64,000 nucleotides of DNA from Haliotis rufescens. Taxonomy: Eukaryota. The stretch spans positions 36,642,001 to 36,706,000 of the forward strand of contig NW_025964383.1 in assembly GCF_023055435.1 (NCBI RefSeq), written 5' to 3'. Below are positions 25,623 through 60,496 of this stretch, one piece after another; position 1 is the first letter of the stretch; every line of letters begins with the position of its first letter. The notes under the pieces are model-generated. The model had not been told where the DNA came from. It saw only the letters and a list, made by a program, of their open reading frames with translations, and searched no databases. The position numbers and the translations under genes are program-made.

Positions 25623-25662
25623 CTTGTAAAGAGGCGAGGTGGTCTTCATCATCGACAATCAT
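25623..25662 (-). CDS. Exon 18, 40 nt, phase 0->1 (MIVDDEDHLASLQ-G)
   Basis: ttccatttggtcag|...CAAG|gtgagt. Phase fits exon 17 and the B30.2 exon. Confidence 0.78.
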
Positions 25663-25761
25663 CTGACCAAATGGAAGAGTGAGTTTAGTGTCTAATGTAC
25701 AAGGAAACACACACATAACATCATTGTATAATATATCTGTGCAACGTGGTCTTACATAATT

Positions 25762-27913
25762 GAGTGAAGACACAAGACACAGAACGAAGATAACACATGT
25801 CACACTAAATACTTCCCACACAGGCAGAGTGAAGACACACATGACACAGGACGAAGATAACACATGTCACACTAAACACTTCCCACACAGGCAGAGTGAA
25901 GACACACATGACACAGGACGAAGATAACACATTTCACACTAAACACTTCCCACACAGGCAGAGTGAAGACACACATGACACAGGACGAAGATAACACATG
26001 TCACACTAAACACTTCCAACACAGGCAGAGTGAAGACACACATGACACAGGACGAAGATAACACATGTCACACTAAACACTTCCCACACAGGCAGAGTGA
26101 AGACACACATGACACAGGACGAAGATAACACATGTCACACTAAACACTTCCCACAAAGGCAGAGTGAAGACACACATGACACAGGACGAAGATAACACAT
26201 GTCACACTAAACACTTCCCACACAGGCAGAGTGAAGACACACATGACACAGGACGAAGATAACACATGTCACACTAAACACTTCCAACACAGGCAGAGTG
26301 AAGACACACGTGACACAGGACGAAGATAACACATGTCACACTAAACACTTCCAACACAGGCAGAGTGAAGACACACATGACACAGGACGAAGATAACACA
26401 TGTCACACTAAACACTTCCAACACAGGCAGAGTGAAGACACACATGACACAGGACGAAGATAACACATGTCACACTAAACACTTCCCACACAGGCAGAGT
26501 GAAGACACACATGACACAGGACGAAGATAACACATGTCACACTAAACACTTCCCACACAGGCAGAGTGAAGACACACATGACACAGGACGAAGATAACAC
26601 ATGTCACACTAAACACTTCCCACACAGGCAGAGTGAAGACACACATGACACAGGACGAAGATAACACATGTCACACTAAACACTTCCCACATAGGCAGAG
26701 TGAAGACACACATGACACAGGACGAAGATAACACATGTCACACTAAACACTTCCCACACAGGCAGAGTGAAGACACACATGACACAGGACGAAGATAACA
26801 CATGTCACACTAAACACTTCCCACACAGGCAGAGTGAAGACACACATGACACAGGACGAAGATAACACATGTCACACTAAACACTTCCCACACAGGCAGA
26901 GTGAAGACACACATGACACAGGACGAAGATAACACATGTCACACTAAACACTTCCCACACAGGCAGAGTGAAGACACACATGACACAGGACGAAGATAAC
27001 ACATGTCACACTAAACACTTCCCACACAGGCAGAGTGAAGACACACATGACACAGGACGAAGATAACACATGTCACACTAAACACTTCCCACACAGGCAG
27101 AGTGAAGACACACATGACACAGGACGAAGATAACACATGTCACACTAAACACTTCCCACACAGGCAGAGTGAAGACACACATGACACAGGACGAAGATAA
27201 CACATGTCACACTAAACACTTCCAACACAGGCAGAGTGAAGACACACATGACACAGGACGAAGATAACACATGTCACACTAAACACTTCCCACACAGGCA
27301 GAGTGAAGACACACATGACACAGGACGAAGATAGCACATGTCACACTAAACACTTCCAACACAGGCAGAGTGAAGACACACATGACACAGGACGAAGATA
27401 ACACTTGTCACACTAAACACTTCCCACACAGGCAGAGTGAAGACACACATGACACAGGACGAAGATAACACTTGTCACACTAAACACTTCCCACACAGGC
27501 AGAGTGAAGACACACATGACACAGGACGAAGATAACACATGTCACACTAAACACTTCCAACACAGGCAGAGTGAAGACACACATGACACAGGACGAAGAT
27601 AACACATGTCACACTAAACACTTCCAACACAGGCAGAGTGAAGACACACATGACACAGGACGAAGATAACACATGTCACACTGAACACTTCCCACATAGG
27701 CAGAGTGAAGACACACATGACACAGGACGAAGATAACACATGTCACACTAAACACTTCCCACACAGGCAGAGTGAAGACACACATGACACAGGACGAAGA
27801 TAACACATGTCACACTAAACACTTCCCACACAGGCAGAGTGAAGACACACATGACACAGGACGAAGATAACACATGTCACACTAAACACTTCCCACACAG
27901 GCAGAGTGAAGAC
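25762..27913. repeat. 67-bp minisatellite, ~32 nearly identical copies
   Basis: Unit gagtgaagacacacatgacacaggacgaagataacacatgtcacactaaacacttcccacacaggca. Confidence 0.97.
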
Positions 27914-28009
27914 ATGGGGAGAAACAGATAATCATTACAACTCTTCTCTCACTCAAACCCGTAAATCAAAGACGATGAACAGGCAGACTAAAGACAGTAA
28001 ATGCAACCC

Positions 28010-28420
28010 GTCTCACAAAGACAGAATATAGAGAGTGAAAACAACATATCTTACACAGACAGAATATAGAGAGTGAATACAACACATCTCACACAGGCAG
28101 AATATAGATTGGGAATACAACACATCTTACACAAGCAGAATATATATAGATGGTGAATACAACACATCTCACACAGGAAGAATATAGATAGTGAATACAG
28201 CACATCTCCCACAGGCAGGATATAGATAGTTCATACAATCCGTCTCCCACAGGCAAAATATAGAGAGTGAATACAACACGTCTCCTACAGGCAGAATATA
28301 GATAGTGAATACAACACATATATCACACAGGCAGAATATAGATAGTGAATAAAACACATGTCACACTGGCTGGATATAGATAGTGAACTCAACACATATA
28401 TCTCATACAGGCAGAATAAA
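28010..28420. repeat. ~38-bp diverged minisatellite
   Basis: cacacaggcagaatatagatagtgaatacaacacatct variants, about 10 copies. Confidence 0.9.
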
Positions 28421-28444
28421 TATGTACACTGCAGTGCTGCATTA

Positions 28445-29395
28445 CGTAAGACATGGAGTAATCCTAAGGGGTGGACCACACCGAATTGCTGTATTACTTA
28501 ACCCTGAAGAAAGACATGTAGTAATCCTAAGGGGTGGACCACACCGAATTGCTGTATTACTTAGCCCTGCAGAAATACATGGAGTAATCCTACGGGATAA
28601 CCCACGCTGTATTGCTGTTTTCCTTTAACCCTAAAGTAAGGCATGGAGTAATCCTAAGGGGTGAACCACACTGCATTGCTGTAGTACTTAACCCCTGAAG
28701 AAAGACATGGAGTAATCCAAAGGGGTGAACCACACTACATTGATGTGTTACTTAACTCCTGAAGTTAGACATGGAGTAATCCTAAGGGATAACCCACGCT
28801 GCATTGCTGTATTCCTTAAACCCCGAAGTAAGACATTGAGTAATCCTAAGGGGTGAACCACACCACATTGCTGTATTACTTAGCCCTGAAGAAAAACATG
28901 GAGTAATCCTTAGGCGTAAGCCAGTCTTCATTGCTGTAGGCCTGTATTACCAACGCTGTTGTGCTGTAGTACTTAACCCCTGAAGTAAGATATGGCGTAA
29001 TCATAAGGGGTGAACCACACTGCATTGCTGTATTACTTAACCCCTGAAGAAAGACATGGAGTAATCCTTAGGCGTAATCCACACTTCATTGCTGTAGTCC
29101 TGTATTACCAACGCTGTAGTGCTGTAGTACTTAACCCCTGAAGAAAGACATGGAGTAATCCAAAGGGGTGAACCACACTCCATTGCTGTATTACTGAACC
29201 CCTTAAGTTAGACATGGAGTAATCCAAAGGGGTGAACCACACTGCATTGCTGAAGTACTTAACCCCTGAAGTAAAACATGGAGTAATCAAAAGGGGTGAA
29301 CCACACTGCATTGCTGTATTACTTAACCCCTGAAGAAAAACATGGAGTAATCCTAAGGGATGAGCCACACTGCATTGCTCTATTACTTAACTCCA
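28445..29395. repeat. ~63-bp minisatellite, ~14 copies
   Basis: acatggagtaatcctaaggggtgaaccacactgcattgctgtattacttaacccctgaag variants. Confidence 0.93.
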
Positions 29396-29456
29396 GGCGA
29401 AAGATCAGAAATGGGCCCCACTGGATATAAATAGATATAAGATAACGTCTTCTTAC

Positions 29457-29563
29457 GTTTCCTATGATGTCAAACAGGTCACTCTCCTTCAGCAACCCCT
29501 GTTGAAACCGCCTCAGCTTGGCAATCTGACTTCTCTTCACATGCCTCTGGTGGCTTTCATCTT
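29457..29563 (-). CDS. Exon 17, 107 nt, phase 1->0 (E-DESHQRHVKRSQIAKLRRFQQGLLKESDLFDIIGN)
   Basis: tatattttatcag|...AAAC|gtaaga. Open frame; similar to exon 57970-58073. Confidence 0.82.
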
Positions 29564-30410: not shown

Positions 30411-30685
30411 ACCCCGGTGTTGCGCAATGGTGTCAGGAGGCTAACGTTGCTAAGTGGGTCAGAAAAGGTCAGCAACGTTGGATGCACTGATCTCCATGTC
30501 CTTGAGGACAGCTGTTCCCTTCAAGGATGCCATTTGGGATATGTACAATCATTATCATTAGTGACTACGCAAATCCTCATCATGTCAGCGTTATGGACCA
30601 GTACTTGAATGATGACAGAATCGACCGTATTGTGTGGCCAGCTCGATCACCTGACCCGAGTCCGAGAGTACAGGTTTAGGACGTC

Positions 30686-31642
30686 CATTACACCACATCC
30701 CGCAGTTCCCCGTTATAGCTAGGCAGGTCCTGCTCAATGTTGCCATAACACCACGTCCTGCAGTTCCCCCGACATATAGAGGTCCTGCGTGGTGTTGCCA
30801 TTACACCACACCCTGCAGTTCCCCGATATATACAGGTCCTGCTTAGTGTTGCCATTACACCACACCCTGCAGTTCCCCGATATATACAGGTCCTGCTTAG
30901 TGTTGCCATTACACCACATCCGGCAGTTCCAAGATATATACAGGTCCTGCTTGGTGTTGCCATTACACCCATCCTGCAGTTCCCCGACATGTAGAGGTGT
31001 TGCCTAGTGTTGCCATTACACCCATCCTGCAGTTCCCCGATATATAGAGGTCCTGCTTAGTGTTGCCATTACACCACATCCTGCAGTTCCCCGATATATA
31101 CAGGTCCTGCTCGGTGTTGCCATTAGACCACATCATGCAGTTTCCCGATATATACAGGTCCTGCTTAGTGTTGCCATTACACCACATCCGGCAGTTCCAA
31201 GATATATACAGGTCCTGCTTAGTGTTGCCATTACACCACATCCGGCAGTTCCAAGATATATACAGGCCCTGCTTGGTGTTGCCATTACACCGCATCCTGC
31301 AGTTCCCCGACATATAGAGCTGTTGCCTAGTGTTGCCATTACACCCATCCTGCAGTTCCCCGATATATACAGGTCCTGCTTAGTGTTGCCATTACACCCA
31401 TCCTGCAGTTCCCCGATATATAGAGGTCCTGCTTAGTGTTGCCATTACACCACATCCTGCAGTTCCCCGATATATACAGGTCCTGCTTGGTGTTGCCAAT
31501 AGGCCACATCATGCAGTTCCCCGATATATTGAGGTCCTGCGTACTTTTGTCATTACACCACATCCTGCAGTTCCCCGATATATACAGGTTATGCTTTGTG
31601 TTGCCATTACACCACATCCTGCAGTTCCCCGATATATACAGG
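30686..31642. repeat. 54-bp minisatellite, ~17 copies
   Basis: Unit ccattacaccacatcctgcagttccccgatatatacaggtcctgcttagtgttg. Confidence 0.95.
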
Positions 31643-32050: not shown

Positions 32051-32108
32051 CTGGAGAAATCTCTAACTTGGCTGTCTGGATGTGGGAAGGTCCGGGTCTG
32101 ACCATCTC
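32051..32108 (-). CDS. Exon 16, 58 nt, phase 0->1 (EMVRPGPSHIQTAKLEISP)
   Basis: aataattgcag|...CCAG|gtaaga. Same length, phase and SP ending as exon 58267-58324. Confidence 0.8.
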
Positions 32109-32719: not shown

Positions 32720-32814
32720 ACTGATGACTTCCGGCAGGTCCACGTCGTACAGGGACAAGACATCCTGGTGTCTCTGTAGGTAGTGCACTTTGATGAGCCA
32801 CTCATCAGGAAGGT
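32720..32814 (-). CDS. Exon 15, 95 nt, phase 1->0 (D-LPDEWLIKVHYLQRHQDVLSLYDVDLPEVIS)
   Basis: ttttgtacctacag|...CAGT|gtgagt. Similar to exon 59647-59732. Confidence 0.82.
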
Positions 32815-32991
32815 CTGTAGGTACAAAATAAGTCACATGACATGTTCTTGATAATTGTGGTTTAGGTTTAGACGGACGTGTTCGTGACCTGCATGTGCCA
32901 TTTCAGATCTATTTGTTTGTACAAGGGGAGTTGTACAATGCAAGTTGTGCATGTGCAATGGCAAAACAACATCAGAAACACCGTGAGTATT

Positions 32992-33570: not shown

Positions 33571-33613
33571 CACAGTACAGCGAATCAAGGTGTCGTTTTT
33601 GGAGGTCATGTTC
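33571..33613 (-). CDS. Exon 14, 43 nt, phase 0->1 (EHDLQKRHLDSLYC)
   Basis: tttttccgtatattttaag|...TGTG|gtacgt. Same length and phase as exon 60119-60161. Confidence 0.75.
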
Positions 33614-33828: not shown

Positions 33829-33878
33829 CTGCTCTAAGGTCAGCAACATCTTCTCTTGTTCGACGACCTCTGCAATAC
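33829..33878 (-). CDS. Exon 13, 50 nt, phase 1->0 (C-IAEVVEQEKMLLTLEQ)
   Basis: cttcagcttcag|...GCAG|gtacaa. Same length and phase as exon 60447-60496. Confidence 0.72.
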
Positions 33879-34289: not shown

Positions 34290-35098
34290 GGTACATTCAT
34301 TGATTCTCAACACTTTTAGTTCAGGCTAAGTGTTATATACCATGTCACTGTGGATATTAGATCATTGATCTCTTTCAAGCCAGGAACGTTGTCTACACAT
34401 GTCAAGCTGCACACGTTTAGTTCAGGCTTAATGTTATATACAATGTCACTGTGGATATTAGATCATTGATCTCTTTCAAGCCAGGAACGTTGTCTACACA
34501 TGTCAAGCTGCACACGTTTAGTTCAGGCTTAGTGTCATATACCATGTCACTGTGGATATTAGATCGTTGATCTCTTTCAAGCCAGGAACGTTGTCTACAC
34601 ATGTCAAGCTGCACACGTTTAGTTCAGGCTTAGTGTCATATACCATGTCACTGTGGATATTAGATCATTGATCTCTTTCAAGCCAGGAACGTTGTCTACA
34701 CATGTCAAGCTGCACACTTACATATTTGTCTCTCTCAAGATTTGTGTTTCAGGTTAACATATATAATATACTCCCGGGTACATTCATTGATTCTCAACAC
34801 GTTTAGTTCAGGCTTAGTGTCATATACCATGTCACTGTGGATATTAGATCATTGATCTCTTTCAAGCCAGGAACGTTGTCTACACATGTCAAGCTGCACA
34901 CTTACATATTTGTCTCTCTCAAGATTTGTGTTTCAGGTTAACATATATAATATACTCCCGGGTACATTCATTGATTCTCAACACGTTTAGTTCAGGCTTA
35001 GTGTCATATACCATGTCACTGTGGATATTAGATCATTGATGTCTTTCAAGCCAGGAACGTTGTCTACACATGTCAAGCTGAACACTTACATATTTGTG
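34290..35098. repeat. Compound tandem repeat (101-bp units nested in 184-bp units)
   Basis: ttagttcaggct recurs at 34316, 34417, 34518, 34619, 34803 and 34987. Confidence 0.93.
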
Positions 35099-35156
35099 TC
35101 TCTGCAGCTCTCATGTCCCGTTCTTGACTTGCAGTGTAGTCATCACTCAATGTCTC
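35090..35156 (-). CDS. Exon 12, 67 nt, phase 0->1 (ETLSDDYTASQERDMRAAETQI)
   Basis: ctgtatgtttgtag|...ATAT|gtaagt. Open frame. Confidence 0.75.
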
Positions 35157-35256: not shown

Positions 35257-35306
35257 CTTTGACATAGATTGCTCTTCAACTAGACTGCTTTGAGACTCGT
35301 CCATAT
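35257..35306 (-). CDS. Exon 11, 50 nt, phase 1->0 (D-MDESQSSLVEEQSMSK)
   Basis: atgtttcctcag|...AAAG|gtagga. A 100-nt intron separates it from exon 12. Confidence 0.75.
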
Positions 35307-36282
35307 CTGAGGAAACATATACTTTGTTGTTATCAAACACATGACAGCTATTGTATACACATAAACATAAATATATAACATAATGCCATGTTTTGCATCG
35401 ATGTCTACATGAACTAAGTTGAAAGATGATCATGATGCTTTAAACACACAAAGAACATTTCTTAATTTGAATAACCTGTCACACACGCTATGACTATTGC
35501 ACTGGATAAATTGGACTAGTATAAAGAAAACACAAGTTAAAATTAAAACGTTGTTGCTAAAGTGCTCTTGCTGTAAACATTTCTTTTTTGTACTTTTCGT
35601 TATATCATCAACGTCTCATATTCAGTTTTGGAAACAAAGCGAATATGTTTACATCCATTATGCCCCATTAAGAAATGCGTGCACTTGGACCTGTTCTATA
35701 CAGTCAATGCCCCTGAGTCCAAAACTCAATGATACGCTGCTAGCTGACTGGTACCTTTAACCATCTTAATAGTGTGGTGTTACTACGAGACCACCACAGG
35801 GAGCCGTGGCTATTATTGGATATTATTGGGGTTTCCATTTTTTTTTTTTAAATATCACAGTTGAAAAAATCCGAAAATCTAAAAATCAGTTGACCTTTCG
35901 ATTGATAAGTGAGGAAGTACAAAATGGTTCATGAGTTCTGCTATGGAAATGGAGCCTTCATTAAATTCGAATTTGTAAGATTTTCCTTGAAAACATACCA
36001 AGATAGTAAAGGACACCTGTTCAAGCCTTGACTGATATCTGTGTAATTTGTGCTCATGGAAGCCTTCAAAAATTCCTAAACGGCAAAATGCACCAGTTCA
36101 TGGCTGGACTGATATCTGTTAAAAGTTTGATACAGAAATATTAAACGATCTTTGCGTTTTGGTCCGGAAACAAAACGTGACGGACGGAAGATGTGACGAA
36201 CAACACTCAATCCTGTGTCCCCTCCCACTGTGGCGGGGAATATTACATCAGCAAGGACGAGAACAACCAGACTCATGATCAC

Positions 36283-36505: not shown

Positions 36506-36673
36506 CTGTATTGCCATCTGCCCCACGCCCCCTGTCTTCGTCTCATCTTTTTCTTTGTCTCCGGAATCTTTAAGAGAATTTGCAATCTTCACAGACAAAA
36601 TGTTTTGAGTCCTTTGCGTTTCAGTTAAACATGTGTTGATTTGTTGAACAATAGTCCTTACTCCCGAAAGTTG
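36506..36673 (-). CDS. Exon 9, 168 nt, phase 0->0 (QLSGVRTIVQQINTCLTETQRTQNILSVKIANSLKDSGDKEKDETKTGGVGQMAIQ)
   Basis: cattatattag|...ACAG|gtaacc. 56 open codons; the acceptor is only moderate. Confidence 0.62.
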
Positions 36674-38650: not shown

Positions 38651-39591
38651 TCCTATCTCTAAATATCAAACCTACAATTTTCATTGTTGACGATATAAGT
38701 ATATATGTATCATGATTAATGACGTTAGTACCACACGAGTGACACATAGATCAAAGACTGACGAAAGTGACACTTTGCACTTTCAGTGACGAAGTAACAG
38801 TTTATCACATGAGGTAAAATAACTTTGTTTCTGGGTGGTACTGCGTTCGACAATTCAGTAGCAGTGATTCGTACATCCAGAATGAGGAATATCATACATG
38901 TGTAACATTACTTAGGATTTATGCACATTATATCAGTTTCTTACAATTGTAAGTAACTAATTGAAACACTTTGTGTTCATTCCAAACAACCAAAGTTCTT
39001 CAAAATATCGAACACGATTCACCCTGTTTGTAATACTTAGTTGTTTACGACCATCCCAATGCTAAATTCTCGCTTCTACTTTTCCTCACAAATTATACTG
39101 ACACGTCGTGACATGATTGAGAATAATTAAAAAAGTGGCGTTAAACCGAACCCCCTTTCCTGTCACACTGCTATGGTAGATTAATCTGCTAATTAATCCT
39201 TTATTTCAGTTTTCTAACTACAGAAAAATGTCAATACCAATTTAATAAGTGTTATGATTATTAAACCACTGTTTACCACATTTTTAGAACATCCTATTTT
39301 GACCATACAACATAAACTTACCTCTTTCACTGTTTCTCTCCATCTTTACCTGCAACTGAGAGAAGTTAACTGCCTATACACATTTTATCATGGAAAAGAA
39401 TCAACGATCCTAAGCACACATTGTCCAAACCTTTTCCCCAAAACTGTAACAAAAATGTTAACCGCAACTCATGAATAGTCAGGTTTCAACAACTGTACCT
39501 GCTTTATGAATACATAGTTGGACGCCGGACAAACAGTCAGGGGTGCTAAAATGTATGAGATCATTACTACATCGTATGTAAAACAACGTAC

Positions 39592-39665
39592 CTGCTTGGT
39601 GACGCGTTCCAGTTCCCTTTCAAGGTTTAAGGCTGTGGCATCATCAGACTGTTCTCTAAAAAACT
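39592..39665 (-). CDS. Exon 8, 74 nt, phase 1->0 (E-FFREQSDDATALNLERELERVTKQ)
   Basis: ccttctattttag|...GCAG|gtacgt. Coiled-coil-like peptide. Confidence 0.72.
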
Positions 39666-39786: not shown

Positions 39787-39816
39787 CTGTTTGCCGCTGT
39801 TTCATTATCCAAGAAT
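39787..39816 (-). CDS. Exon 7, 30 nt, phase 1->1 (D-SWIMKQRQT)
   Basis: ctttattttttcag|...ACAG|gtagag. Strong acceptor; symmetric exon. Confidence 0.62.
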
Positions 39817-44100: not shown

Positions 44101-46000
44101 GATTACGGATACCCTACACCAATCGCCTTTACGTATGAATGTTGCTATACCACCTGACCCACGCTGAGAAGTACTGGTACAGCTGCATTTATAGTAAACA
44201 TCAAAATCATCATGTATAGTGTTCATAAGGGAGGCATTTTGTTCACTTAACCAATGTTAAGTCACAAAGAATAGATCTGTGCTGTCTAGTCTGGTACATA
44301 ACTGATGTGTACCGTGCATAATGCCTCGTATGTTCCAAGTTGCTATTCGAAGCATACCGAGTAGTAACAGTGCACTATGTATAATGTTTATTGTTAGTAT
44401 GGCTTTTCATTCTCGGCTCCTGAGTTGTCATATGTATACCAAGAACTTTTTGGTACCCATTCTCTGCAGTTAACATTTTCAGGCCAGAACGTTTCATCGG
44501 CCAATATTGCTTTTGCACATTGTGTTGGCATATTTACACGTATTGTGTAAGTTGAATTTCGGCCTTCCCAATGCTTAAGGAGCTTCATATAACTAATTGT
44601 AACACCACGCTGTGTTGCATAGTCCTTGATCGCGTCTTGTACAATTTCAAAGGGCATGTCAGCTTTTACATAAGACAGAACAAGCCTCTTTTGTTTAAAG
44701 CGAGAGGCCCCAGAGAAGGCTTTTTTTCCACTGATCGTTCAGCTGGACTGTCCTTGATTGGCTTGTATGATTTTCTTCACTGGGGCTTTCGCATACAATA
44801 GTAAGGGACGGTTCATTGTTCGTGTGGTCACGAGATATTTCTTGTCGCGAGTGTCTCACATTGTTTGGCTTTTGTCTGTGGTCTCGGATTGTTGAGTTTG
44901 TTGATCTAGATGGGTCACCATCACTAATTGCTGGACAATGAGCTGCTGCTTGGGTTGTTGCTGTATTTTCAAATGTCACACGCAGGTCATCAGGATTCGC
45001 ACTTTTTACGGCTTCTGAGTACAATAGCTTACTTCTGGTGCTCATACAATCTATTTTCCCATCTATAGCAGACGTTCGTTTATCAATTGTTGATATTCTT
45101 GTATGTAGAGTTTCTTGGAGCTCTTTAATATCTACATTCTTACGTTATGAAAACAAGTTCTTTGTTCTTTTCCTCTAATGCAGTAATCATGTGAAACATG
45201 TCCTCTTCATATTTAGACTGGAAATCGTTCATTTTATCATAGATGACTGTAAAGCGTTCATTCATCTCTTCATGCATACACATTAGTTTTGAGAGGAAAC
45301 ATACAAGCACATCTTTGTCTTTATCATCCACAAGTTCAGTGTTTTCGTCAGATACTTCGTTACCGTGAGCACGTGATTTCTGTCGACTCATGACTTCCGA
45401 TTAAATAACTTGAGCAGGCACAGACCCAGTAATATAGCTATAGAGCAGGTACACATCTGATGCATATTTCATAAGCACACTTTTAGTCTGGCCGGCTCTT
45501 TTCACCCTCTTTATAAGGGCACCATCTGGAAAGTCAGGTTTTTCACTCTTTGCAATGTCATACAGTGAGAAACGAATGTCATTTAGTTGGTTTTCCTCAT
45601 CCGTGTATATCGTAGTCAACTTAGTTTCACATGTCTGTCTATCATACCCACTAAGTGTGTCGCGTAGCTCATTTAGGATACCATAGTCCAGAGAGTCGGG
45701 TTCCTGTGTAGAGTATCGTGGAGAACTGGTGTTGCTCATACTTTCAGCTAGTACGGACAATAGAAATAAAGTGAGTTACTTTCAGGTTGATGGATCCAAA
45801 TGTAGTAAGGTCCACATGGTATACATCCAATAATCCAAATGAGAATAAATCACACACCCTCTGAAGGACTTGCAAACTTCATATTCTTTCCACTGTCCAG
45901 TGAAGATCATATATAACATGTAGCTCCCTGTAAGCTTACACGGACGCTCAGGTCGAGGGAGGCAACACAAGCACGTCCTCACTCCACGGTGGCTTGGGTA
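41178..46000 (-). mobile_element. APE-type non-LTR retrotransposon (LINE) with ORF1 and EN-RT ORF2, frameshifted and 3'-truncated
   Basis: ORF1 pieces at 45760-44394. EN: MLRIATWNIRG (44355), TGDFNA, IDY, SDHLPI. RT: KSPGPDG, NYRGITL, QFGFR, KAFDRV, QG, ADD. Ends at ECICG, running straight into satellite. Clade not resolved. Confidence 0.93.
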
Positions 46001-47988: not shown

Positions 47989-50951
47989 AGCCGGATCCGA
48001 GACGTGGTGTGGAATTCTGAGCCTGTGTATAACTTGCTGCAACGGTAGCGTGTGGCCTTGGTTATGTCTTTGTTGTAATGAGTCTTGCAGAATATAAAGA
48101 GTCTCCTTCGATGGCGTCTATATGGGTCTGTAGCCCAGAGGTAGAACTTGGGAGCTCTGAAGGGACATAAAAGTCCGGGTGATCCACTGTTGGTTCCAAA
48201 GCAGGAATGGAATAGGGTCTATGGCCCAACGAACCCAACGTGGTAGATTGATTCTTGGCTTCAAACTCTGGGAGTGATCTTAGAGTTATTGAGGTCCAAT
48301 GTTGATCATTGGTGAGACTAGAAAAGTCCATAGCATGGAATTCTGAAACTCTTGCTGCTGCCGCCATGGCAAGGAGGAAGGAAGCTTTCCTGGATTTTTG
48401 GAGTAAGGTAGCCTAAGCCAGGGGCTCGTAAGGTTCCATGTCGGAATTTATTGTTCTGACGTAGATGTTGTAGAAATTCCGCTACCATTGGGATAGACAT
48501 AGCATTAGTTATAATCCCTTGTCGTAGAACAAAGGGTATGTCTCTGCTTGTGCCGTATTTCATCAAAAAACTCCAATAAAACCAGGCCTATAATCGTGCG
48601 CATGTGCCACTGGGAAGACAAGTGGCACTCAGTGAAACTTAGGAGTGTACTGAAACAGAATGGGATAGGAATCGCTAATGGCCTGTCAAACCAACAGAGA
48701 CAGGAACTGTACAAGCTTCGTAGTGAGAACCCTAACACTAGATACTACTACAAGGAGAATAAGCTCGTCGAGGAACCTAAGGAGGACAGTGTACAGAATT
48801 CACAGGATAATATCAGCCAGCAGGACAAACCTCCCAGGCGACAGCTTAGATCCTACTCTCACGCTGCCTCTAGGGGACAGTCGAGCTAGAGGTGTAGTCA
48901 GGGCCGAGTAAGAGACAATGTACATACTTCTAGTGATTGTAGGACGCTTCATCAAGAATCTGTGGACCTATTTGACAATCAACTTGTAAGTAAGGAAAAT
49001 CTTGTGAAATTTGTGATTCTGGAATATTTCTGGAATATAGGGTAAATTAAGTGACTCTTACTTCTGTAGCTATGTACAAAACTTTGACATCATTGGAATT
49101 ACAGAAACATGGTGTAAGGATCTCAATTTAGGTAATGTTTTTCAAAATTATGAAATCATTAACAAAGAGGCAAATAAATTATCATCTTATGGCAGACTTT
49201 CTGGTGGCATTTTAGTTATGGCTAGAAAAGAATTGTCTAAATATGTAAGATGGACAAAAAATTCTGAAAATGCAATTTTCGTACTATTTGACAAACAACT
49301 TTTTGGAACAGAATTAGATTTGCTTTATGCTTGTGTGTACATACACCCAGAGAGTTCCTCATGGTATGATAAGTTTAGTTCTAATTGCAAAAATGGTGTC
49401 ACTCTTTTTCAAGAGAAACTACTTACAATATTATCAGAATTGGATGATGTACATGTATTAGCCGGATCCGAGACGTGGTGTGGAATTCTGAGCCTGTGTA
49501 TAACTTGCTGCAACGGTAGCGTGTGGCCTTGGTTATGTCTTTGTTGGAATGAGTCTTGCAGGATATAAAGAGTCTCCTTCGATGGCGTCTATATGGGTCT
49601 GTAGCCCAGAGGTAGAACTTGGGAGCTCTGAAGGGACATAAAAGTCCGGGTGATCCACTGTTGGTTCCAAAGCAGGAATGGAATAAGGTCTATGGCCCAA
49701 CGAACCCATCGTGGTAGATTGATTCTTGGCTTCAAACTCTGGGAGTGATCTTAGAGTTATTGAGGTCCAATGTTGATCATTGGTGAGACTAGAAAAGTCC
49801 ATAGCATGGAATTCTGAAACTCTTGCTGCTGCCGCCATGGCAAGGAGGAAGGAAGCTTTCCTGGATTTTTGGAGTAAGGTAGCCTAAGCCAGGGGCTCGT
49901 AAGGTTCCATGTCGGAATTTATTGTCCTGACGTAGATGTTGTAGAAATTCCGCTACCATTGGGATAGACATAGCATTAGTTATAATCCCTTGTCGTAGAA
50001 CAAAGGGTATGTCTCTGCTTGTGCCGAGAGACATTGAGAGGGCCCGCCGTATTTCATCAAAAAACTCCAATAAAACCAGGCCTATAATCGTGCGCATGTG
50101 CCACTGGGAAGACAAGTGGCACTCAGTGAAACTTAGGAGTGTACTGAAACAGAATGGGATAGGAATCGCTAATGGCCTGTCAAACCAACAGAGACAGGAA
50201 CTGTACAAGCTTCGTAGTGAGAACCCTAACACTAGATACTACTACAAAGGGAATAAGCTCGAGGAACCTAAGGAGGACAGTGTACAGAATTCACAGGATA
50301 ATATCAGCCAGCAGGACAAACCTCCCAGGCGACAGCTTAGATCCTACTCTCACGCTGCCTCTAGGGGACAGTCGAGCTAGGGGTGTAGTCAGGGCCGAGT
50401 AAGAGACAATGTACATACTTCTAGTGATTGTAGGACGCTTCATCAAGAATCTGTGGACCTATTTGACAATCAACTTGTAAGTAAGGAAAATCTTGTGAAA
50501 TTTGTGATTCTGGAATATTTCTGGAATATAGGGTAAATTAAGTGACTCTTACTTCTGTAGCTATGTACAAAACTTTGACATCATTGGAATAACAGAAACA
50601 TGGTGTAAGGATCTCAATTTAGGTAATGTTTTTCAAAATTATGAAATCATTAACAAAGAGGCAAATAAATTATCATCTTATGGCAGACTTTCTGGTGGCA
50701 TTTTAGTTATGGCTAGAAAAGAATTGTCTAAATATGTAAGATGGACAAAAAATTCTGAAAATGCAATTTTCGTACTATTTGACAAACAACTTTTTGGAAC
50801 AGAATTAGATTTGCTTTATGCTTGTGTGTACATACACCCAGAGAGTTCCTCATGGTATGATAAGTTTAGTTCTAATTGCAAAAATGGTGTCACTCTTTTT
50901 CAAGAGAAACTACTTACAATATTATCAGAATTGGATGATGTACATGTATTA
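47989..50951. repeat. Tandem duplication (47989-49460 and 49460-50951) of a DIRS-YR/LINE chimeric junction
   Basis: Near-identical 1471- and 1491-bp units differing by a 23-bp and a 3-bp indel plus a few substitutions. Confidence 0.95.
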
Positions 50952-53900
50952 TGTGGTGGTGATTTCAATGCCAGAACTGGAACTAAATCTGACTTTGTTG
51001 AAGATGACATAATAGAGTATACTGAAAATCATAATTACTTCTTGTCTGATCTTATATCGGATTACTTCAATCTTGAACGCTTTTCTCTAGATAGAGTTTT
51101 AAACAGCTTTGGAAAATGTTTAACCGATTTATGTTCAGTTCTGAATATTCATATCTTGAATGGAAGATGTGGTAGAGATAAACATGTCGGTGACTTTACT
51201 TTTATTGGTGTAAATGGTACCAGTGTAATTGACTATATTAGAGCCTCTTCACCATTATTTGTCAATGTTGGAGACTTTGGTGTAGAATTTCGCTCAGACT
51301 CAGGTTACCTTCCAGTTACTATGACATTAAGAGTACCTGAAACACACCAACCCTCAAAACAAAGGAATGATCAGGCTACTAAATCTTTCAAATTTGTCTG
51401 GGATAATGACAAATCACAACATTTTAGCGATCAACTCTTTTCTGACCAAGTTCAAGATTTACTTGATAAATCAGTAAATACAGCATTGTCCAATATTGAT
51501 GTAAGTATTATTTACTTAGTGGATGCCTTGAAATTAGCGGGCTCAGACATGCAAAAAATGGTTAGAAATCCAAAGCTTAATCAATTGTGTAAATGGTATG
51601 ATGCAGAATGTGAGGGTCTTAAAAAGAAAAGATGTAGGGCACTCAATAAATTCAGGAGATGTAAAGATAAAGACTCACTTAGAGAATATCATAACATAAG
51701 AAACAAATATATAGCTGTGTGCAAAGAAAAGAAACAAGAATATTTACATGATAAGCAACAATCCTTAGAAAATAACATTTATGACTCTAAACTATTTTGG
51801 TCAGAACTGAAAAGTCTAAGCAAACATCAAAAGGCAAATGATATCAACATTAAGGATTGGTACATCTACTTTAAAGAATTATTTACTTTCACAGATACTG
51901 ATCAGAGCCCTGAAAATCAGTTCCAGGAGTAAAAAGATAATACTCAGACTCAAACAGATACTCAGTTTGCAAATGATATACTGGATTCCCCTATTACCAG
52001 AGATGAGATTTTAGAGAGTATACACCATCTTAAATGCAACAAATCACCAGGAATGGATCAGATTATTCTTGAGTTTTTAAACATTCCTCAGATATCATTG
52101 TACCGTACCTTGAACTTATATTTAATGTTATATTAGTAAATGGAACATGTCCAGATGCATGGTCAGTAGGGATGATTGTGCCAATACATAAACAAGGTGA
52201 TCTAAATCATATCAACAATTACAGAGGTATTTCACTGCTAAGTATATTTGGTAAGCTATTCACAAACATAATGAATAAAAGGTTAGTGTTTTTGGCAGAT
52301 ACCCTCAACAAAATCAATGAAGAACAAGCTTGATTTAGAGAGGGCTATTCAACTATTGACAACATTTTTATCCTTCAAGTTTTAGTTAACAAATACCTCA
52401 GTGTCCAGGGTGGGAAACTTTATGTGCTCTTCGTTGACTTTGCCAAGGCATTTGACTCAGTGCAGAGACATAATCTGTGGAACCTTTTAAGATCACATGG
52501 CCTCAGCCTTAAGATTAACAAACTATTAGGAAGCATTTACGCGAATATTAATGTGTATGTGCGAAACAATAATGATATTTCAGAAACATTTATTAGTCAG
52601 TTAGGAGTAAGACAAGGATGAATCTTAAGCCCATTTCTCTTTACCTTTTTCATAAATGAACTGGCTGTACAAATAAGTGCCAACTGTAATTATGGTGTTC
52701 AGCTCCATCCAGATATTACACAGATATTTTAACTTTTATTTGCAGATGATATTGCTCTCTTTTCATCATCAATCAAAGGACTGCAGTGTCAAATTAATGA
52801 ACTTGAAAGTTACTGCAATAAATGGAAGCTAACAGTAAACATGAGTAAAACAAAAGTTTTGGTATTTAAGAATGGAGGTCATTCAGCAAGTAAAGAATAT
52901 TGGTCATTTAAAGGACAAAAAATTGAAACTACAGGATTTTATAAATATCTTGGTGTTTACTTCAGTAGAAACTTGTGATGGCATAAACATTTGTATCAAG
53001 CTGCTTTACAAGCAAGAAAGGTCTTTGTAAGTATCCATAAGAGTTTAAAAGTTTTCGAAACCATTTCTCATCAATCATTTTTTTAAACATTTGATATAAA
53101 TATACTCCCCATTTAGTTGTATGGGGCAGAAGTCTGGGGTTTACATCACTTTGATGCCATAGAAAAGATTCATTTATATGCTTCCAAAAGTATTTAGGCG
53201 TTAAAATAAACACTACCAGCTTGGTGGTGTATGGAGAATGTGGAAGATTCCCTCTCTATGTATATTCAAATATAAAAGTTATTAAATGCTGGCTGAGACT
53301 GATTGACATGCCCTCATATAGATTGCCAAAAAAGTGTTATAATATGATGACAGTTTATGATAATAATGGGAAAAGAACTGGTTACAGGTGTTAGAGAATT
53401 ACTTTTCAGTTGTAGCTTTGGTGATATTTGGCAAAACCAAAATGTGTATTCCAAATCAATGTTTATACTTTCATTAACCCAGAGATTAAAGGATATTTAT
53501 TTACAATCTTGGACTGCATCATTGACTCTAACAAACAAGTGCTCTTATTACAAAATGTTTAAATCAGAAATAATTATGGAAGATTATTTATCAAAAGTTA
53601 ATGTTAAAAAATTTCGAACGGCTCTTTCACGTTTTAGATGTTCTTCTCACGACCTTTTAATAGAAACAGGGTGCTATGTTAACATTCCCCGTGAAGAAAG
53701 AATCTGTAATCCATGTAGTTTAAACTCAGTAGAAGATAAATGATATTTCTTACTTGTATGTCCAGTGTATTTACACCTTAGAGAAAAATACCTGCAAGCT
53801 TATTATTACAGGTACCCTAATATTATTAAATTTGTTACACTGCTGTCAAACACAAAAAGAAGTATCTTACAAAATGTTTCCATGTACATATATTATGCCT

Positions 53901-56984: not shown

Positions 56985-57300
56985 TGGTCAACCAAAATTT
57001 ATGTTTCACCATGATTCCATGGAAACGGCAAAAAAATTTAAAATCAGAATCTTCAAACTAGCAAAACACCCACCCTAAACGTTTAAATTTCTAATGTTTC
57101 CATGGAAACGGCAACAAAATTTAAAAATCGGAATCTTCAAACTAGGAAAAGGCACAAGTACTCATTGTGGTTAATGTGTGTAGAAAGCTTAGTTAAGCTA
57201 GGGTGCATGGTTAAAATGGGCCGTACAAAAGCTCGGTCGGAAGGACGGACGGACGGACGGAGGGACGGACAGACGGAACGCTATAATAATCTTAGATTAA
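56985..57300 (+). mobile_element. Non-autonomous element relic with an internal duplication and a (GGAC)n tract (HINE/Helentron-associated-like)
   Basis: Duplicated ttccatggaaacggca...aatcttcaaactag followed by ggacggacggacgg. Similar architecture at ~35860-36240. Confidence 0.45.
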
Positions 57301-57796
57301 TGTGACTTACAACCAAGTGCTAGATTGTTACACTATTACAATAGGTGTTGACTCAAGCACACACAGGAAAAAAGTGAGGTTCCCGCGACTGCATACGTCA
57401 TAGATTGGATGGTTACGATGCTATTTGTGTGTGATTGACAGTGAAGAGGACGTCTGTTGAAAATCTGAAAATTTTAGCTAGTGTGACTGAAGCCGAAAGG
57501 ATTTATGGCAAAGATGTATGAGAAGTATAGATTTCGTATATTATTATAACTGCTTTCCTGTTCTGTCATTCGCTTAACTTTGCTCGACGCGACGACTTCA
57601 GTTTGATTCAATAACGTTTGCAAAGTTCCTGGCAAACCATACACGAAGATGACGTCATAGTGCATAACATATAAACGAAGCGTTGACTTCTAATAGGTCA
57701 GCTAATTACCTGATGCTAAAATTACGTCTAATGTCTAGAGTTGAAGTTGTGACTATAAGCATGAATGATCTTTTCATGGGCATTCTTTGTACTTAC

Positions 57797-57845
57797 CTTT
57801 TGTAGCCTGGAAATACCCAATGAGGATCTTGTCTTCAACTAGAAA
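57797..57845 (-). CDS. Exon 6, 49 nt, phase 0->1 (FLVEDKILIGYFQATK)
   Basis: ttcttgtttctctag|...AAAG|gtaagt. FLVED parallels MIVDD of exon 18. Confidence 0.78.
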
Positions 57846-57969
57846 CTAGAGAAACAAGAACAATATAAGTCGCATACAGTCATGAATACATAGTTGTATG
57901 TTGTTTTGTTTTATCTTGCTTCTTACCAGATATATATTTTTCGTGTTTGCCCCTGTCTCATATTCTCAC

Positions 57970-58073
57970 CTCTTTTATGCTGCACAGAACATCTTTCTGT
58001 CCATGTATTCTCTGTTTAAACTCCATGAGTTGAGGTTTCATCCTAATCGCCAGGAGGTCCCGACCCCCACACA
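57970..58073 (-). CDS. Exon 5, 104 nt, phase 1->0 (V-CGGRDLLAIRMKPQLMEFKQRIHGQKDVLCSIKE)
   Basis: gtcttctgttacag|...AGAG|gtgaga. Confidence 0.8.
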
Positions 58074-58266
58074 CTGTAACAGAAGACACCCGTTTACTTG
58101 TGAGAACAGTTTTCCAAAGGATGAATGAAGGATATTTCTTATGGTAAGCAAGCTTAAAGAACAACGCAGCCAGGCACAGCATATACTTCTTACACCTTGG
58201 TATCTCACCATGAATGACACACTAGTTCATATTGCTTCACTATGTGTTTAACCTCCTCATTCTCAC

Positions 58267-58324
58267 CTGGTGAAAGGTCGTCAACTGGAAGATGTCGAAG
58301 TGCCTTTTCCTTTCGATCAAGTTC
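58267..58324 (-). CDS. Exon 4, 58 nt, phase 0->1 (ELDRKEKALRHLPVDDLSP)
   Basis: tttgtcaatattgtag|...CCAG|gtgaga. Confidence 0.8.
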
Positions 58325-59646
58325 CTACAATATTGACAAACAAAAATAAATGAATACAACAAAACTGATAGTGACGCAAAGCCCTCACCATTGCACTTCA
58401 GAATCACATGGCCAAATTCACACGTGTATAATAGACTATTTCTCATCAAATGTCGAAGTGTACTTATAACTATCAATGGATGTTTATACCAATGTCAGTG
58501 AAATGATTGACCATTCCAATGAACGCGATGAAGGTGTATTTTGGGGCAAAGCTATCTTTAAACAGCGAACACTGGCGACATAACAACAGCTATAACTGTT
58601 CTGAAACATATGCAGCTTATATGGCAATGTGTCGATACTGATTTACTTGTACCGGCCCCGAATACCACATGCTATTTGACCATTACATGCCAGATGCTTT
58701 CTTGGCAACAACGGGATATTGTCGGTTAAGCGACACTAGCAACGGTAGGGATAACTATCACTATAGATAGTTCATTGATTCGGTGATTTCCAAAAGCCAG
58801 ATCTCTGCAACAGGACCATCCTTAGCTTGTTGTTACAAGCCAAATAATCTCTGCCGTGTGTTAATGCATTTTGCGAGATTCTTTTCGGAGGATGTTGTCT
58901 GTTAGCGAGACACTGTTGTACACAAGTAATATAATTATTTAAACAAATGTTTGATTATGCTAGTTTAAGTATATTTAAATCTAGCAGGGCAAAGTTCCTG
59001 AGGATTACTTTTTGAGCAGCGATTGAGCAGCGAATATTCTAACATGACTATATCTGAGAGTGTGACATTTTGTTACTGTCATCATCTCACCTGTGGTGTT
59101 TGAGCAAAAGGAAGACTTGCCTTACAATGATATATTTTTGATGTATATATATCATATTGCCATTTTTAAGAAAAGTACTTGAGACTATCATAAAACCAGT
59201 AGCGGTTGACTAAAGAAACACTGATAATTCTTAACGGTGCAAATAAAGGGCAAAAACAGGCTGAATGTTATCGGCCTGAAAAGGTACAGTATTGTACTGG
59301 CACCTACTGAAGTCAGTGTGCACATTAGTAATCAGGAATGCTGTCATCACGCAAGTAATGCCGTGTCAGCTAAACGATATCAGGCGTGAAAAGGACCAGT
59401 ATTGGACCATGGAGCCGGTACCTAAAATGTACTTCCAAGTCAATGTGCAAACCAGTAGTAAGCAGTGGATGGGGCGGACTCACTGTTGTAATCGGGCTGC
59501 TATTGGTCTAAGTATGCAATGTTAGCTGGGGTGTGTTTTGAATGGCTATACCATTATTAAATGTCGAGGTTGATGACGAATTGAGTCTTCACCCTCAAAA
59601 TGTTATACATTACGTTACTATTATATAACTATTCGGTGTCACTCAC

Positions 59647-59732
59647 AGTCATGGGGCGCTTTGATTTTACAGAAAAAAGCCGCAACACGTCCATTTCTTC
59701 AAAAAGGAAGTTTATTTGTCTTTGCCAGTGAT
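59647..59732 (-). CDS. Exon 3, 86 nt, phase 1->0 (D-HWQRQINFLFEEMDVLRLFSVKSKRPMT)
   Basis: tttcatgtctttccag|...GACT|gtgagt. Confidence 0.82.
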
Positions 59733-60118
59733 CTGGAAAGACATGAAACGTAAAGACACAAGTAAACCCCAGAAAGCAAAAGCATGCTACAATCAACATG
59801 TTTAAATATCCTACAGGCAGCAGGTTGTCATATTTCTGCCTTACCTCGGTCAAAACAACAACAAAAAAACATTACTGTCAAAGGGGTCTTAAATTAAGAC
59901 ACTGTTGGTGCATCTTGTGAACAAACTGTGATACATTTCACACAAGAACTGATACACATGTTTACAAACATCTCAGCCTTGAACCGTTGAGGACGTTGAG
60001 GATACCCTTATTTAGTGGAACATGTGGAATATTTGCTGAATATTCCCGAAATATCTTAATAACTGATCAATATGAGAACATGCAATATATATATTATTCT
60101 TGCGTGTTATGAACTCAC

Positions 60119-60161
60119 CATTTTCCAATGCATCTATTTGTCCTTTAATGCTGTCCACCTC
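60119..60161 (-). CDS. Exon 2, 43 nt, phase 0->1 (EVDSIKGQIDALEN)
   Basis: tgtatgtttcag|...AATG|gtgagt. Heptad-like peptide. Confidence 0.8.
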
Positions 60162-60446
60162 CTGAAACATACAATTAATTCATTATTCTTCTCACTGATT
60201 TTATTAATACACGCTCATACACTACATACACATACAAGCTGATGTAGATAACTAACCACGTGTAAGACAGTCATCAACGAAGTCATGAAGTTTTTTGTGG
60301 TCCATGTCAGTCAAGTGGTAAAGCAAAGCCTCACGGTAATTTCTTTAAGTCTATAATCGTTACATGTTACAAGATATGCTTATATAAGCCGATGTAAGAC
60401 TCCCAGTCACATATTGTACTTATTCAAAGCATCTATGTATACTTAC

Positions 60447-60496
60447 TCTTTTCATGGCTGTGTAACGCTTCTTCAGGTTTGCCAATTCCATTTGAA
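60447..60496 (-). CDS. Exon 1 of the reconstructed chain (internal exon), 50 nt, phase 1->0 (QMELANLKKRYTAMKR)
   Basis: aatctttgttgcag|...AAGA|gtaagt. The true first exon was not identified and may lie beyond 64000. Confidence 0.8.

What the first reader, a model, noticed from the sequence alone, without database searches (positions are those of the whole stretch)
25623..60496. Six-exon module duplicated inside the gene with conserved exon sizes and phases
Seen: module A (60496-57797) is 50/43/86/58/104/49 nt and module B (33878-25623) is 50/43/95/58/107/40 nt, with identical alternating phases (1-0, 0-1). Peptides align weakly but colinearly: HWQRQINFLFEEMDVLRLFSV with EWLIKVHYLQRHQDVLSLYDV; both 58-nt exons run E...SP; LMEFKQRIHGQKDVLCSIKE-FLVED with LRRFQQGLLKESDLFDIIGN-MIVDD. 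Inference: an old intragenic duplication or fusion of tandem paralogues, defining a ~130-aa repeat domain that may be undescribed. The match also independently supports the gene model.
Basis: partly seen in the sequence, partly recalled or inferred. Interest (0 to 1): 0.78.

Follow-up and report, generated by a model that had tools for sequence, protein, structure and literature searches.

The report
Duplicated six-exon helical module, abalone gene
A red-abalone gene carries two diverged copies of a six-exon block coding for a helical segment of about 130 residues ahead of its B30.2 end domain, a real and old internal duplication of a module that no domain library names and that was found only in abalones.

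Summary
All twelve exons lie at the stated places on the minus strand with GT-AG borders, sizes 50/43/86/58/104/49 and 50/43/95/58/107/40 and phases alternating 1 and 0. They match the RefSeq model XP_048246365.1, an uncharacterized Haliotis rufescens protein (P0001). RNA-like contigs from three runs splice module A at 4 of its 5 introns.

The two modules are homologous. Exon-wise alignment gives z 7.2, with 0 of 5000 shuffles as high. Profiles built from 7 and 11 family members align end to end at 96% probability, P 2.4e-9. Reversed, shuffled and real coiled-coil controls stay at or below 1%.

A tree splits all A copies from all B copies on one branch, with mirrored subtrees. This points to one duplication before the gene family spread.

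No Pfam family or solved structure matches the module. Every module-bearing protein found is from Haliotis. The order is always A, then B, then a B30.2 domain.

The function is inferred, not shown: probably a helical spacer or assembly region. The interest is moderate.

The parts
60447..60496 (-). Module A exon 1 (50 nt, phase 1 to 0)
   Evidence: AG/GT borders. Matches P0001 aa 107-123 at 100%. RNA-like contigs end or join here.
60119..60161 (-). Module A exon 2 (43 nt, phase 0 to 1)
   Evidence: Borders. Junction to A1 found. Joint 60160>60446 in run X1.
59647..59732 (-). Module A exon 3 (86 nt, phase 1 to 0). It holds the shared W...Y/F...VL.L motif.
   Evidence: Borders. Maps to P0001. Joint 58323>59646 in run X2. 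Strongest exon-wise likeness to B3, z 5.1.
58267..58324 (-). Module A exon 4 (58 nt, phase 0 to 1), the variable loop
   Evidence: Borders. Maps to P0001. Joints in runs X2 and X4.
57970..58073 (-). Module A exon 5 (104 nt, phase 1 to 0)
   Evidence: Borders. Two paralogue copies at 94% and 88% amino-acid identity on the same contig. Joints.
57797..57845 (-). Module A exon 6 (49 nt, phase 0 to 1)
   Evidence: Borders. Joint 57845>57970 in runs X1, X2 and X4. Loose ends there read on into the next linker exon.
39787..39816 (-). Linker exon (30 nt)
   Evidence: P0001 aa 237-246 with junctions.
39592..39665 (-). Linker exon (74 nt)
   Evidence: P0001 aa 247-271 with junctions.
39322..39355 (-). 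Linker exon (34 nt)
   Evidence: P0001 aa 271-282 with junctions.
36506..36567 (-). Linker exon; its 3' border was not resolved
   Evidence: P0001 aa 279-303. No junction found to the next match.
35257..35313 (-). Linker exon; its 5' border was not resolved
   Evidence: P0001 aa 311-329.
35090..35156 (-). Linker exon (67 nt), the last before module B
   Evidence: P0001 aa 330-352 with junctions.
33829..33878 (-). Module B exon 1 (50 nt, phase 1 to 0)
   Evidence: Borders. Maps to P0001.
33571..33613 (-). Module B exon 2 (43 nt, phase 0 to 1)
   Evidence: Borders. Maps to P0001.
32720..32814 (-). Module B exon 3 (95 nt, phase 1 to 0)
   Evidence: Borders. P0001 aa 383-414 at 100%.
32051..32108 (-). 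Module B exon 4 (58 nt, phase 0 to 1)
   Evidence: Borders. Its translation occurs in P0001.
29457..29563 (-). Module B exon 5 (107 nt, phase 1 to 0). It holds the LRxFQQG motif.
   Evidence: Read. Donor confirmed. Two paralogue copies at 94% and 91%.
25623..25662 (-). Module B exon 6 (40 nt, phase 0 to 1)
   Evidence: Borders. Junctions.
25135..25185 (-). 51-nt exon leading into the B30.2 domain; it lies inside an 81-bp tandem repeat
   Evidence: Junctions. Repeat 25043-25400, 4.4 copies.
3037..3707 (-). Terminal coding exon: a diverged B30.2/PRYSPRY domain
   Evidence: 100% identical to P0001 aa 501-723. Pfam SPRY scores only 15.2 bits against a cut-off of 26.3. The model matches MID1, TRIM65 and TRIM7 PRYSPRY structures at Foldseek E 2e-9 to 1e-7, TM 0.70-0.76.

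Best explanation
The window holds most of Haliotis rufescens gene LOC124139577 on the minus strand. Its first 106 codons lie beyond the window's end. The protein (723 aa) has a short N-terminal part, then module A (aa 107-236), a linker of about 115 residues, module B (aa 352-482), a short strand and a diverged B30.2/PRYSPRY domain. A and B are two copies of one ancestral six-exon block. The block is bounded by phase-1 introns, so a copy could be inserted without breaking the frame. It was duplicated once, before this gene subfamily radiated and before the sampled abalone species split. Each module is predicted to be helical. Exons 1-2 give a first helix of about 35 residues. Exon 3 gives a second helix with a conserved W...[YF][LM]......L..[FL] pattern. 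Exon 4 and the start of exon 5 form a variable loop that grows by extra exons in some B copies. Exons 5-6 give a last helical stretch (h..hQ.G......Lh.hh). Shown: the exons, their splicing for A, the homology of A and B, the fixed order A-B-B30.2, and the absence of a named family. Inferred, at about even odds: the pair of modules is a helical spacer or assembly region. It would link the N-terminal part (a P-loop NTPase-like unit in most relatives) to the B30.2 recognition domain. That is the place the coiled coil holds in TRIM proteins, and the family looks like a lineage-specific innate-immune-type expansion.
For: Exons and phases. Identity with RefSeq protein P0001 = XP_048246365.1. Splicing: runs X1, X2 and X4 cover only exons and show joints with CT..AC ends at 4 of 5 module A introns, and one 679-nt contig carries A1 and A3-A6, with unmatched letters where A2 would lie. 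Homology: exon-wise z 7.2, 0 of 5000 shuffles. phmmer cross-hits run colinear over the whole module; for example, B of P0001 hits A of P0003 at i-E 5.4e-6 in a set of 77 proteins. hhalign of 7 A against 11 B segments gives 96.2% probability, P 2.4e-9, 126 columns, and 97.0% in global mode. Controls: reversed alignments score 14.3 and 13.4; 24 column shuffles reach at most 14.6; 24 seven-column block shuffles reach at most 16.9; the real score is 58.3. Two alignments of real TRIM-type coiled coils from the same family reach at most 0.5% against A or B, but 98.7% against each other. Only two copies per protein. Tree of 25 segments: one branch (98/96) separates 11 A from 14 B, with mirrored subclades. 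Exon structure in paralogues: A 50/43/92/70/104/64 and B 50/43/86/... in a gene at C605:30.68 Mb; B 50/43/86/55/62/46/... and A4-A6 67/104/64 in a gene at C605:15.93 Mb. Architecture in 129 stored proteins: A-B-B30.2 in 24, A-B in 4, B-B30.2 in 5, A alone in 1, never B before A. Helical prediction. B30.2 fold. Family partners (CARD, B-box, weak SLFN_GTPase-like and nSTAND hits).
Against: Identity between A and B in this gene is only 21%, and with free end gaps the exon-wise z drops to 3.9. The phase pattern is shared by the linker exons, so it is not specific to the module. The contigs differ from the window by several letters per piece, so they may come from alleles, paralogues or sister species. 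The A2-A3 intron was not seen directly, and module B splicing was not tested with reads. The AlphaFold model is poor (mean pLDDT 51.9, pTM 0.35), so no fold can be claimed for the module. The spacer or assembly role rests on position and analogy alone. The counts include isoforms and near-copies.
Confidence: 0.85

Rival explanations
1. The two modules arose by fusion of two neighbouring paralogous genes that each carried one module, not by copying an exon block inside one gene.
For: The family lies in dense tandem arrays on contig C605. Protein models with B alone before the B30.2 domain (5) and with A alone (1) exist among 129 stored proteins. Exon-block copying between units is common here: in P0005 a fragment like A exons 1-2 follows the first NTPase-like unit.
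Against: No single-module type that is neither A nor B was found. A and B each form one side of the tree. Single-module models are few and may be truncated predictions or secondary losses; P0004 keeps only the last part of A. A block bounded by phase-1 introns on both sides can be duplicated in place without breaking the frame.
Confidence: 0.15
2. The module is only a strongly diverged TRIM-type coiled-coil region (the B-box C-terminal region), so it is a known element.
For: It sits just upstream of a B30.2 domain, as the coiled coil does in TRIM proteins. Other members of the same B30.2 family carry RING-like, B-box and coiled-coil regions at that place. The module is predicted helical.
Against: hhalign of A or B against two alignments of those coiled-coil regions gives 0.1-0.5% probability, while the two alignments find each other at 98.7%. 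P0001 has no RING or B-box hit. Pfam and PDB sequence searches give nothing on the module.
Confidence: 0.08
3. The likeness is chance or the generic likeness of heptad-rich helices, and the equal exon sizes are coincidence.
For: Identity is low at 21%. Exons 1 and 5 alone are not significant, z 1.8 and 1.7. The phases alternate in the linker as well.
Against: Profile alignment at P 2.4e-9 over 126 colinear columns, with all reversed, shuffled, block-shuffled and real coiled-coil controls at or below 1%. The 50 and 43 nt exon sizes recur in both modules of three genes.
Confidence: 0.02

Closest known systems
TRIM proteins with a C-terminal B30.2/PRYSPRY domain (such as MID1, TRIM25, TRIM5alpha)
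   Same: A helical region directly precedes a B30.2 domain. The terminal domain of the model matches MID1, TRIM65, TRIM7 and TRIM25 PRYSPRY structures, and the family profile finds MID1 by sequence at E 5.9e-4. Sister members of the abalone family do carry B-boxes and a TRIM-type coiled coil.
   Different: This protein has no RING or B-box hit. Its helical region is an internal repeat of two modules that do not match the TRIM-type coiled coil of its own relatives. That TRIM coiled coils form antiparallel dimers is recalled knowledge, not tested here.
Fish NLR-B30.2 receptors (large zebrafish NLR family)
   Same: A P-loop NTPase unit is combined with a C-terminal B30.2 domain in a large, tandemly expanded, lineage-specific family. 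The paper PMC4852459 was seen only as a search listing and the start of its abstract.
   Different: The abalone NTPase-like unit gives only sub-threshold hits (nSTAND_NTPase5 at 20.3 bits, SLFN_GTPase-like at 24.1 bits). No leucine-rich repeats were seen. The gene in this window lacks the NTPase unit altogether.
Exon-block (tandem exon) duplication producing internal protein repeats
   Same: Same number of exons, same phases, and sizes that are equal or differ by multiples of three. The block is bounded by introns of one phase.
   Different: Nothing unusual in mechanism. What differs is that the repeated unit is an unnamed module seen only in abalones.

Membership tests
B30.2/PRYSPRY domain (terminal exon) | Sequence match to Pfam SPRY at or above its gathering score | tested here: not met
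   15.2 bits for the terminal reading frame and 13.6 bits for P0001, against a cut-off of 26.3. The family profile finds MID1 PRYSPRY at E 5.9e-4.
B30.2/PRYSPRY domain (terminal exon) | Beta-sandwich fold superposable on solved PRYSPRY domains | tested here: met
   Foldseek: 7qry_B (MID1) at E 2.1e-9 and TM 0.76. TRIM65, TRIM7 and TRIM14 at TM 0.68-0.72. This part of the model has pLDDT of about 60-85.
TRIM (RING, B-box, coiled coil) | RING finger and at least one B-box | tested here: not met
   No such Pfam hit in P0001 at E up to 0.1. B-boxes do occur in relative P0009.
TRIM (RING, B-box, coiled coil) | TRIM-type coiled-coil region | tested here: not met
   hhalign of A or B against the coiled-coil alignments of TRIM-like relatives gives 0.1-0.5%.
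Any named Pfam family for the module | A hit at the family's gathering score inside the module | tested here: not met
   Four exon peptides gave none. In 16 family proteins the best module-region scores were 12.7-15.2 bits, against cut-offs of 25-32. The eight exon peptides under 20 residues could not be scanned.
Internal repeat made by exon-block duplication | Two segments of one chain that align colinearly and significantly | tested here: met
   hhalign 96-97%, P 2e-10 to 2e-9, 126-131 columns. Controls reach at most 1%.
Internal repeat made by exon-block duplication | Same exon number and phases, with sizes equal or differing by whole codons | tested here: met
   50/43/86/58/104/49 against 50/43/95/58/107/40. 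The differences are 0, 0, 9, 0, 3 and 9 nt.
Coiled coil (two-stranded, heptad based) | Heptad periodicity and oligomeric state | not tested
   Only helix prediction from a low-confidence monomer model. No coiled-coil predictor or multimer model was run.

The most novel reading that the evidence does not exclude
Modules A and B fold back on each other into one antiparallel helical bundle within a single chain. This bundle would replace the two-chain antiparallel coiled coil of TRIM proteins. It would define an abalone-specific class of receptors in which a Schlafen- or STAND-like NTPase unit is held next to a B30.2 sensor. In that case the duplication turned a dimerising helix into a self-contained scaffold.
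Probability: 0.12. Interest if true: 0.6.

Novelty: new variant of a known kind. Interest (0 to 1): 0.4.

Why it matters
The finding gives a clean, checkable example of an internal repeat born from a frame-neutral exon block. It also defines two alignable module types that could become a domain model for a large abalone gene family.

That family lies in tandem arrays and is so far annotated only as 'uncharacterized' or under misleading names such as 'myosin heavy chain-like' and 'GLE1-like'. It mixes B30.2 with CARD, B-box and NTPase-like parts, the kind of shuffling seen in innate immune receptors. A named module would help sort these genes in abalone genomes, which matter for aquaculture and disease work.

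The duplication itself is an ordinary evolutionary event.

Tried and rejected
Pfam on single exon peptides gave nothing. This was expected at 28-35 residues.

Own-genome searches with the A5 and B5 peptides found two recent paralogue genes. Their introns are as alike as their exons, 91-93%, so exon-versus-intron conservation could not be used to test the exons. The weak B5-like hits (E 0.6-8) were not followed up.

A third, degenerate module in the linker was sought and not found: at most 0.9% by hhalign, and single-linker HMM scores up to 8.2 bits.

The ESM Atlas gave no hit by features and only generic helical matches by structure, with TM at most 0.52.

The AlphaFold model of P0001 was too weak (mean pLDDT 51.9) to search for the fold of the module. 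I used it only for secondary structure and for the B30.2 part.

The look-up of sequencing runs found no run with more than 0.30 of the words of the terminal exon, and none on record as RNA. I judged the kind of each laid run from its coverage pattern.

Two paper searches found nothing on this abalone family. They were Haliotis / B30.2 / TRIM and abalone / SPRY domain / gene family expansion / innate immun. I saw only listings and the starts of abstracts. I read no paper and saw no supplements, so a genome paper's supplementary gene-family tables could still name the family.

I did not compute dN/dS. The module exons I held for the recent copies are too short.

Full report
THE OBSERVATION. I read both stretches on the minus strand and printed each exon with its flanks. 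Module A is 50/43/86/58/104/49 nt and module B is 50/43/95/58/107/40 nt. In one search I entered B5 ten bases off. Its true place, 29563-29457, comes, and one search confirms its donor. Each module enters in phase 1 and leaves in phase 1, with inner phases 0,1,0,1,0, and totals 390 and 393 nt. The size differences are 0, 0, 9, 0, 3 and 9 nt, all whole codons.

THE GENE. Window sequence went to the search tools exon by exon or as the single terminal reading frame 3037-3792. The one full-library HMMER job, run with that frame, found only 63 proteins at E up to 0.001 among 1.84 billion representatives.

The best hit, P0001 (723 aa), is 100% identical over residues 500-723. It is RefSeq XP_048246365.1, 'uncharacterized protein LOC124139577' of Haliotis rufescens. 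Its sequence contains the translations of all twelve exons in order: module A at aa 107-236 and module B at aa 352-482.

It also places six linker exons (39816-35090), a 51-nt exon (25185-25135) and the terminal exon starting at 3707. Residues 1-106 do not map in the window, so the gene begins beyond position 64000.

RNA. No run is on record as RNA for this gene. When I laid four runs on 57600-60700, three of them (X1, X2, X4; three studies, three coded organisms) covered only the exon bins. The fourth (X15) covered 30 of 30 bins, as DNA does.

The three exon-only runs show these joints, all with CT..AC ends, which is GT..AG on the minus strand:
- 57845>57970 in all three runs
- 58073>58267 in two runs
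- 58323>59646 in one run
- 60160>60446 in one run

That covers 4 of the 5 introns of module A. One 679-nt contig of X2 carries A6, A5, A4, A3 and A1, with 50 unmatched letters where A2 belongs. The A2-A3 intron was not seen directly.

The pieces differ from the window by 3-9 letters each, so they may come from alleles, paralogues or sister species. Module B was not tested with reads.

ARE A AND B HOMOLOGOUS? Exon by exon, global alignment sums to 50, against -78.7 +/- 17.9 for shuffles that keep each exon's composition. That is z 7.2, with 0 of 5000 shuffles as high. The per-exon z values are 1.8, 3.7, 5.1, 2.4, 1.7 and 3.3, and 26 of 124 aligned positions are identical. With free end gaps the figure is weaker: z 3.9, 4 of 5000.

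Within a set of 77 family proteins, phmmer with module B of P0001 hits the A region of P0003 over the whole module (i-E 5.4e-6). Each module also hits the other in P0001 itself (i-E 0.0026 and 0.0042).

I cut 7 A-type and 11 B-type segments from family proteins and aligned each set. hhalign of the two profiles gives 96.2% probability, P 2.4e-9, score 58.3, over 126 colinear columns. In global mode it gives 97.0% over 131 columns.

The controls all fail (unless noted):
- Reversed alignments score 14.3 and 13.4.
- 24 column shuffles have mean 9.9 and maximum 14.6.
- 24 shuffles of seven-column blocks, which keep local helix periodicity, have mean 12.3, maximum 16.9 and highest probability 1.0%.
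- As real coiled-coil controls I took the coiled-coil regions of 9 RING/B-box members and 6 CARD/B-box members of the same family. A and B reach only 0.1-0.5% against them, while the two control alignments find each other at 98.7% over 165 columns.

The likeness is far better than coiled-coil controls.

Against the full-length family alignment, each profile finds itself and the other module (95.9% and 94.8%) and nothing else. The linkers hold no third copy, at most 0.9%. The shared pattern across all 18 segments is L...L.....-......QL..L....W...h.Yh......L..h, then a variable stretch, then h..hQ.G......Lh.hh...h......h..h.

AGE AND ORIGIN. A maximum-likelihood tree of 25 segments puts the 11 A copies and the 14 B copies on the two sides of one branch (98/96 support; 98% of 200 bootstrap trees). 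The subtrees mirror each other: P0012 pairs with P0005, P0003 with P0041, and the P0001 group stays together on both sides. The program warns of long branches, so the deep order inside each side is unsure.

P0012 is from H. asinina and P0005 from H. rufescens. The duplication is therefore older than this subfamily's radiation and older than the split of those species.

The exon structure agrees. A P0005-like gene at C605:30.68 Mb has A as 50/43/92/70/104/64 and B starting 50/43/86. The P0018 gene at C605:15.93 Mb has A4-A6 as 67/104/64 and B as 50/43/86/55/62/46 and onward. The first two exons therefore keep exactly 50 and 43 nt in both modules of three genes, and the middle of B has gained exons.

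One caveat: the linker exons in all three genes also alternate between phases 1 and 0. The phase match alone is therefore weak evidence.

Whether the block was copied inside one gene or two single-module neighbours fused cannot be settled. I favour copying in place, because the block is frame-neutral and no third module type exists.

DISTRIBUTION. The gene family is large and tandemly arrayed on contig C605 and three others. Two recent copies of this very gene lie 0.7-0.9 Mb away and are 91-93% identical including introns.

- A-B-B30.2 in 24
- A-B with the B30.2 cut short in 4
- B-B30.2 in 5
- A alone in 1
- B30.2 alone in 70
- none of the three in 25
- never B before A, and never two full copies of one type

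Isoforms and near-copies are included, so these are not counts of independent genes.

Every module-bearing protein whose source I saw is from H. rufescens, H. cracherodii, H. rubra or H. asinina. Word-seeded searches with module A, with module B and with the family alignment gave 5 of 276, 5 of 120 and 14 of 8000 scored candidates. All were Haliotis. These searches need shared five-residue words, so they cannot prove absence elsewhere.

Of the 20 clusters that I looked up by name, 18 are Haliotis, one holds Crassostrea virginica proteins and one holds fish TRIM-like proteins. This ties the end domain to ordinary B30.2 domains.

IS IT A NAMED DOMAIN? No Pfam family reaches its cut-off inside a module in 16 family proteins. 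The best scores are 12.7-15.2 bits against cut-offs of 25-32. The four exon peptides long enough to scan gave nothing.

PDB sequences give E 0.12 or worse for P0041. The family profile finds only MID1 PRYSPRY, in the B30.2 part, at E 5.9e-4. The ESM Atlas gives nothing usable. Two literature searches found no paper on the family, judging from listings only.

STRUCTURE. AlphaFold2 with a 15-sequence alignment gives a weak model: mean pLDDT 51.9, pTM 0.35. Module A is predicted as helices 101-136, 138-174, 190-208 and 214-250. Module B is predicted as helices 338-383, 386-397, 399-404, 411-416, 446-454 and 460-483. The best block pLDDT values, 76 and 81, fall in the first helix of each module.

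The C-terminal 220 residues are beta-rich. They match solved PRYSPRY domains of MID1, TRIM65, TRIM7 and TRIM14 at Foldseek E 2e-9 to 2e-7 and TM 0.68-0.76.

HOW IT LIKELY WORKS. Shown: a protein with two homologous helical modules in fixed order ahead of a B30.2 domain. Relatives place different parts ahead of the same domain: a doubled P-loop NTPase-like unit (sub-threshold SLFN_GTPase-like and nSTAND hits), a CARD with B-boxes, or a RING-like/B-box/coiled-coil set.

Inferred, at about even odds: A and B form a helical spacer or assembly region between the N-terminal part and the B30.2 recognition domain. That is the place of the coiled coil in TRIM proteins. The family as a whole looks like a lineage-specific innate-immune-type expansion. 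No experiment or expression data bear on this.

VERDICT. The gene is already annotated, though uncharacterized. The duplication mechanism is ordinary. The module itself is unnamed and so far seen only in abalones. The interest is moderate.

Noticed in passing
window 4990-22110: A 17-kb satellite (44-bp unit, 388 copies, 81% matches) fills most of the last intron. It creates long false open reading frames in several frames of both strands.
   Followed up: partly
window 25043-25400: The 51-nt exon that leads into the B30.2 domain lies inside an 81-bp tandem repeat of 27 codons and 4.4 copies. Several near-identical candidate copies of this exon therefore exist side by side.
   Followed up: partly
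window 25762-27914, 28448-29391, 30685-31642, 34310-35103: The introns of module B and of the linker hold further tandem arrays: 67 bp x 32 at 98% matches, 64 bp x 15, 54 bp x 18, and 101/184 bp units.
   Followed up: no
window 60879-64000: A 41-bp satellite of about 76 copies starts 380 bp upstream of exon A1 and runs to the window's end. In the two close paralogues an NTPase-like exon lies about 4.6 kb upstream of A5. This gene's protein lacks that unit.
   Followed up: partly
window 41155-44256 (-), 50532-53740 (+), 48065-50400: Long open frames inside the big intron between modules A and B have the look of retrotransposon endonuclease and reverse-transcriptase genes. Part of the element is duplicated at 48-50 kb. 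They were not scanned against any family library.
   Followed up: no
G000:C605:36641303-36641989 (-), just before window position 1: A second B30.2-type terminal exon lies directly outside the window, 65% identical to the end of P0005. It sits beside the one at window 3037-3707.
   Followed up: partly
proteins P0003, P0005, P0015, P0018 (relatives, not this window): Most relatives carry one or two copies of a unit of about 350 residues with a Walker-A-like GSGATT stretch that has no lysine. It gives only sub-threshold hits to SLFN_GTPase-like (24.1 bits) and nSTAND_NTPase5 (20.3 bits). In P0005 a fragment like module A exons 1-2 follows the first unit.
   Followed up: partly
database names of relatives: Several family members carry misleading automatic names: 'myosin heavy chain, cardiac muscle isoform-like', 'CAP-Gly domain-containing linker protein 1-like', 'early endosome antigen 1-like' and 'mRNA export factor GLE1-like'.
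   Followed up: no
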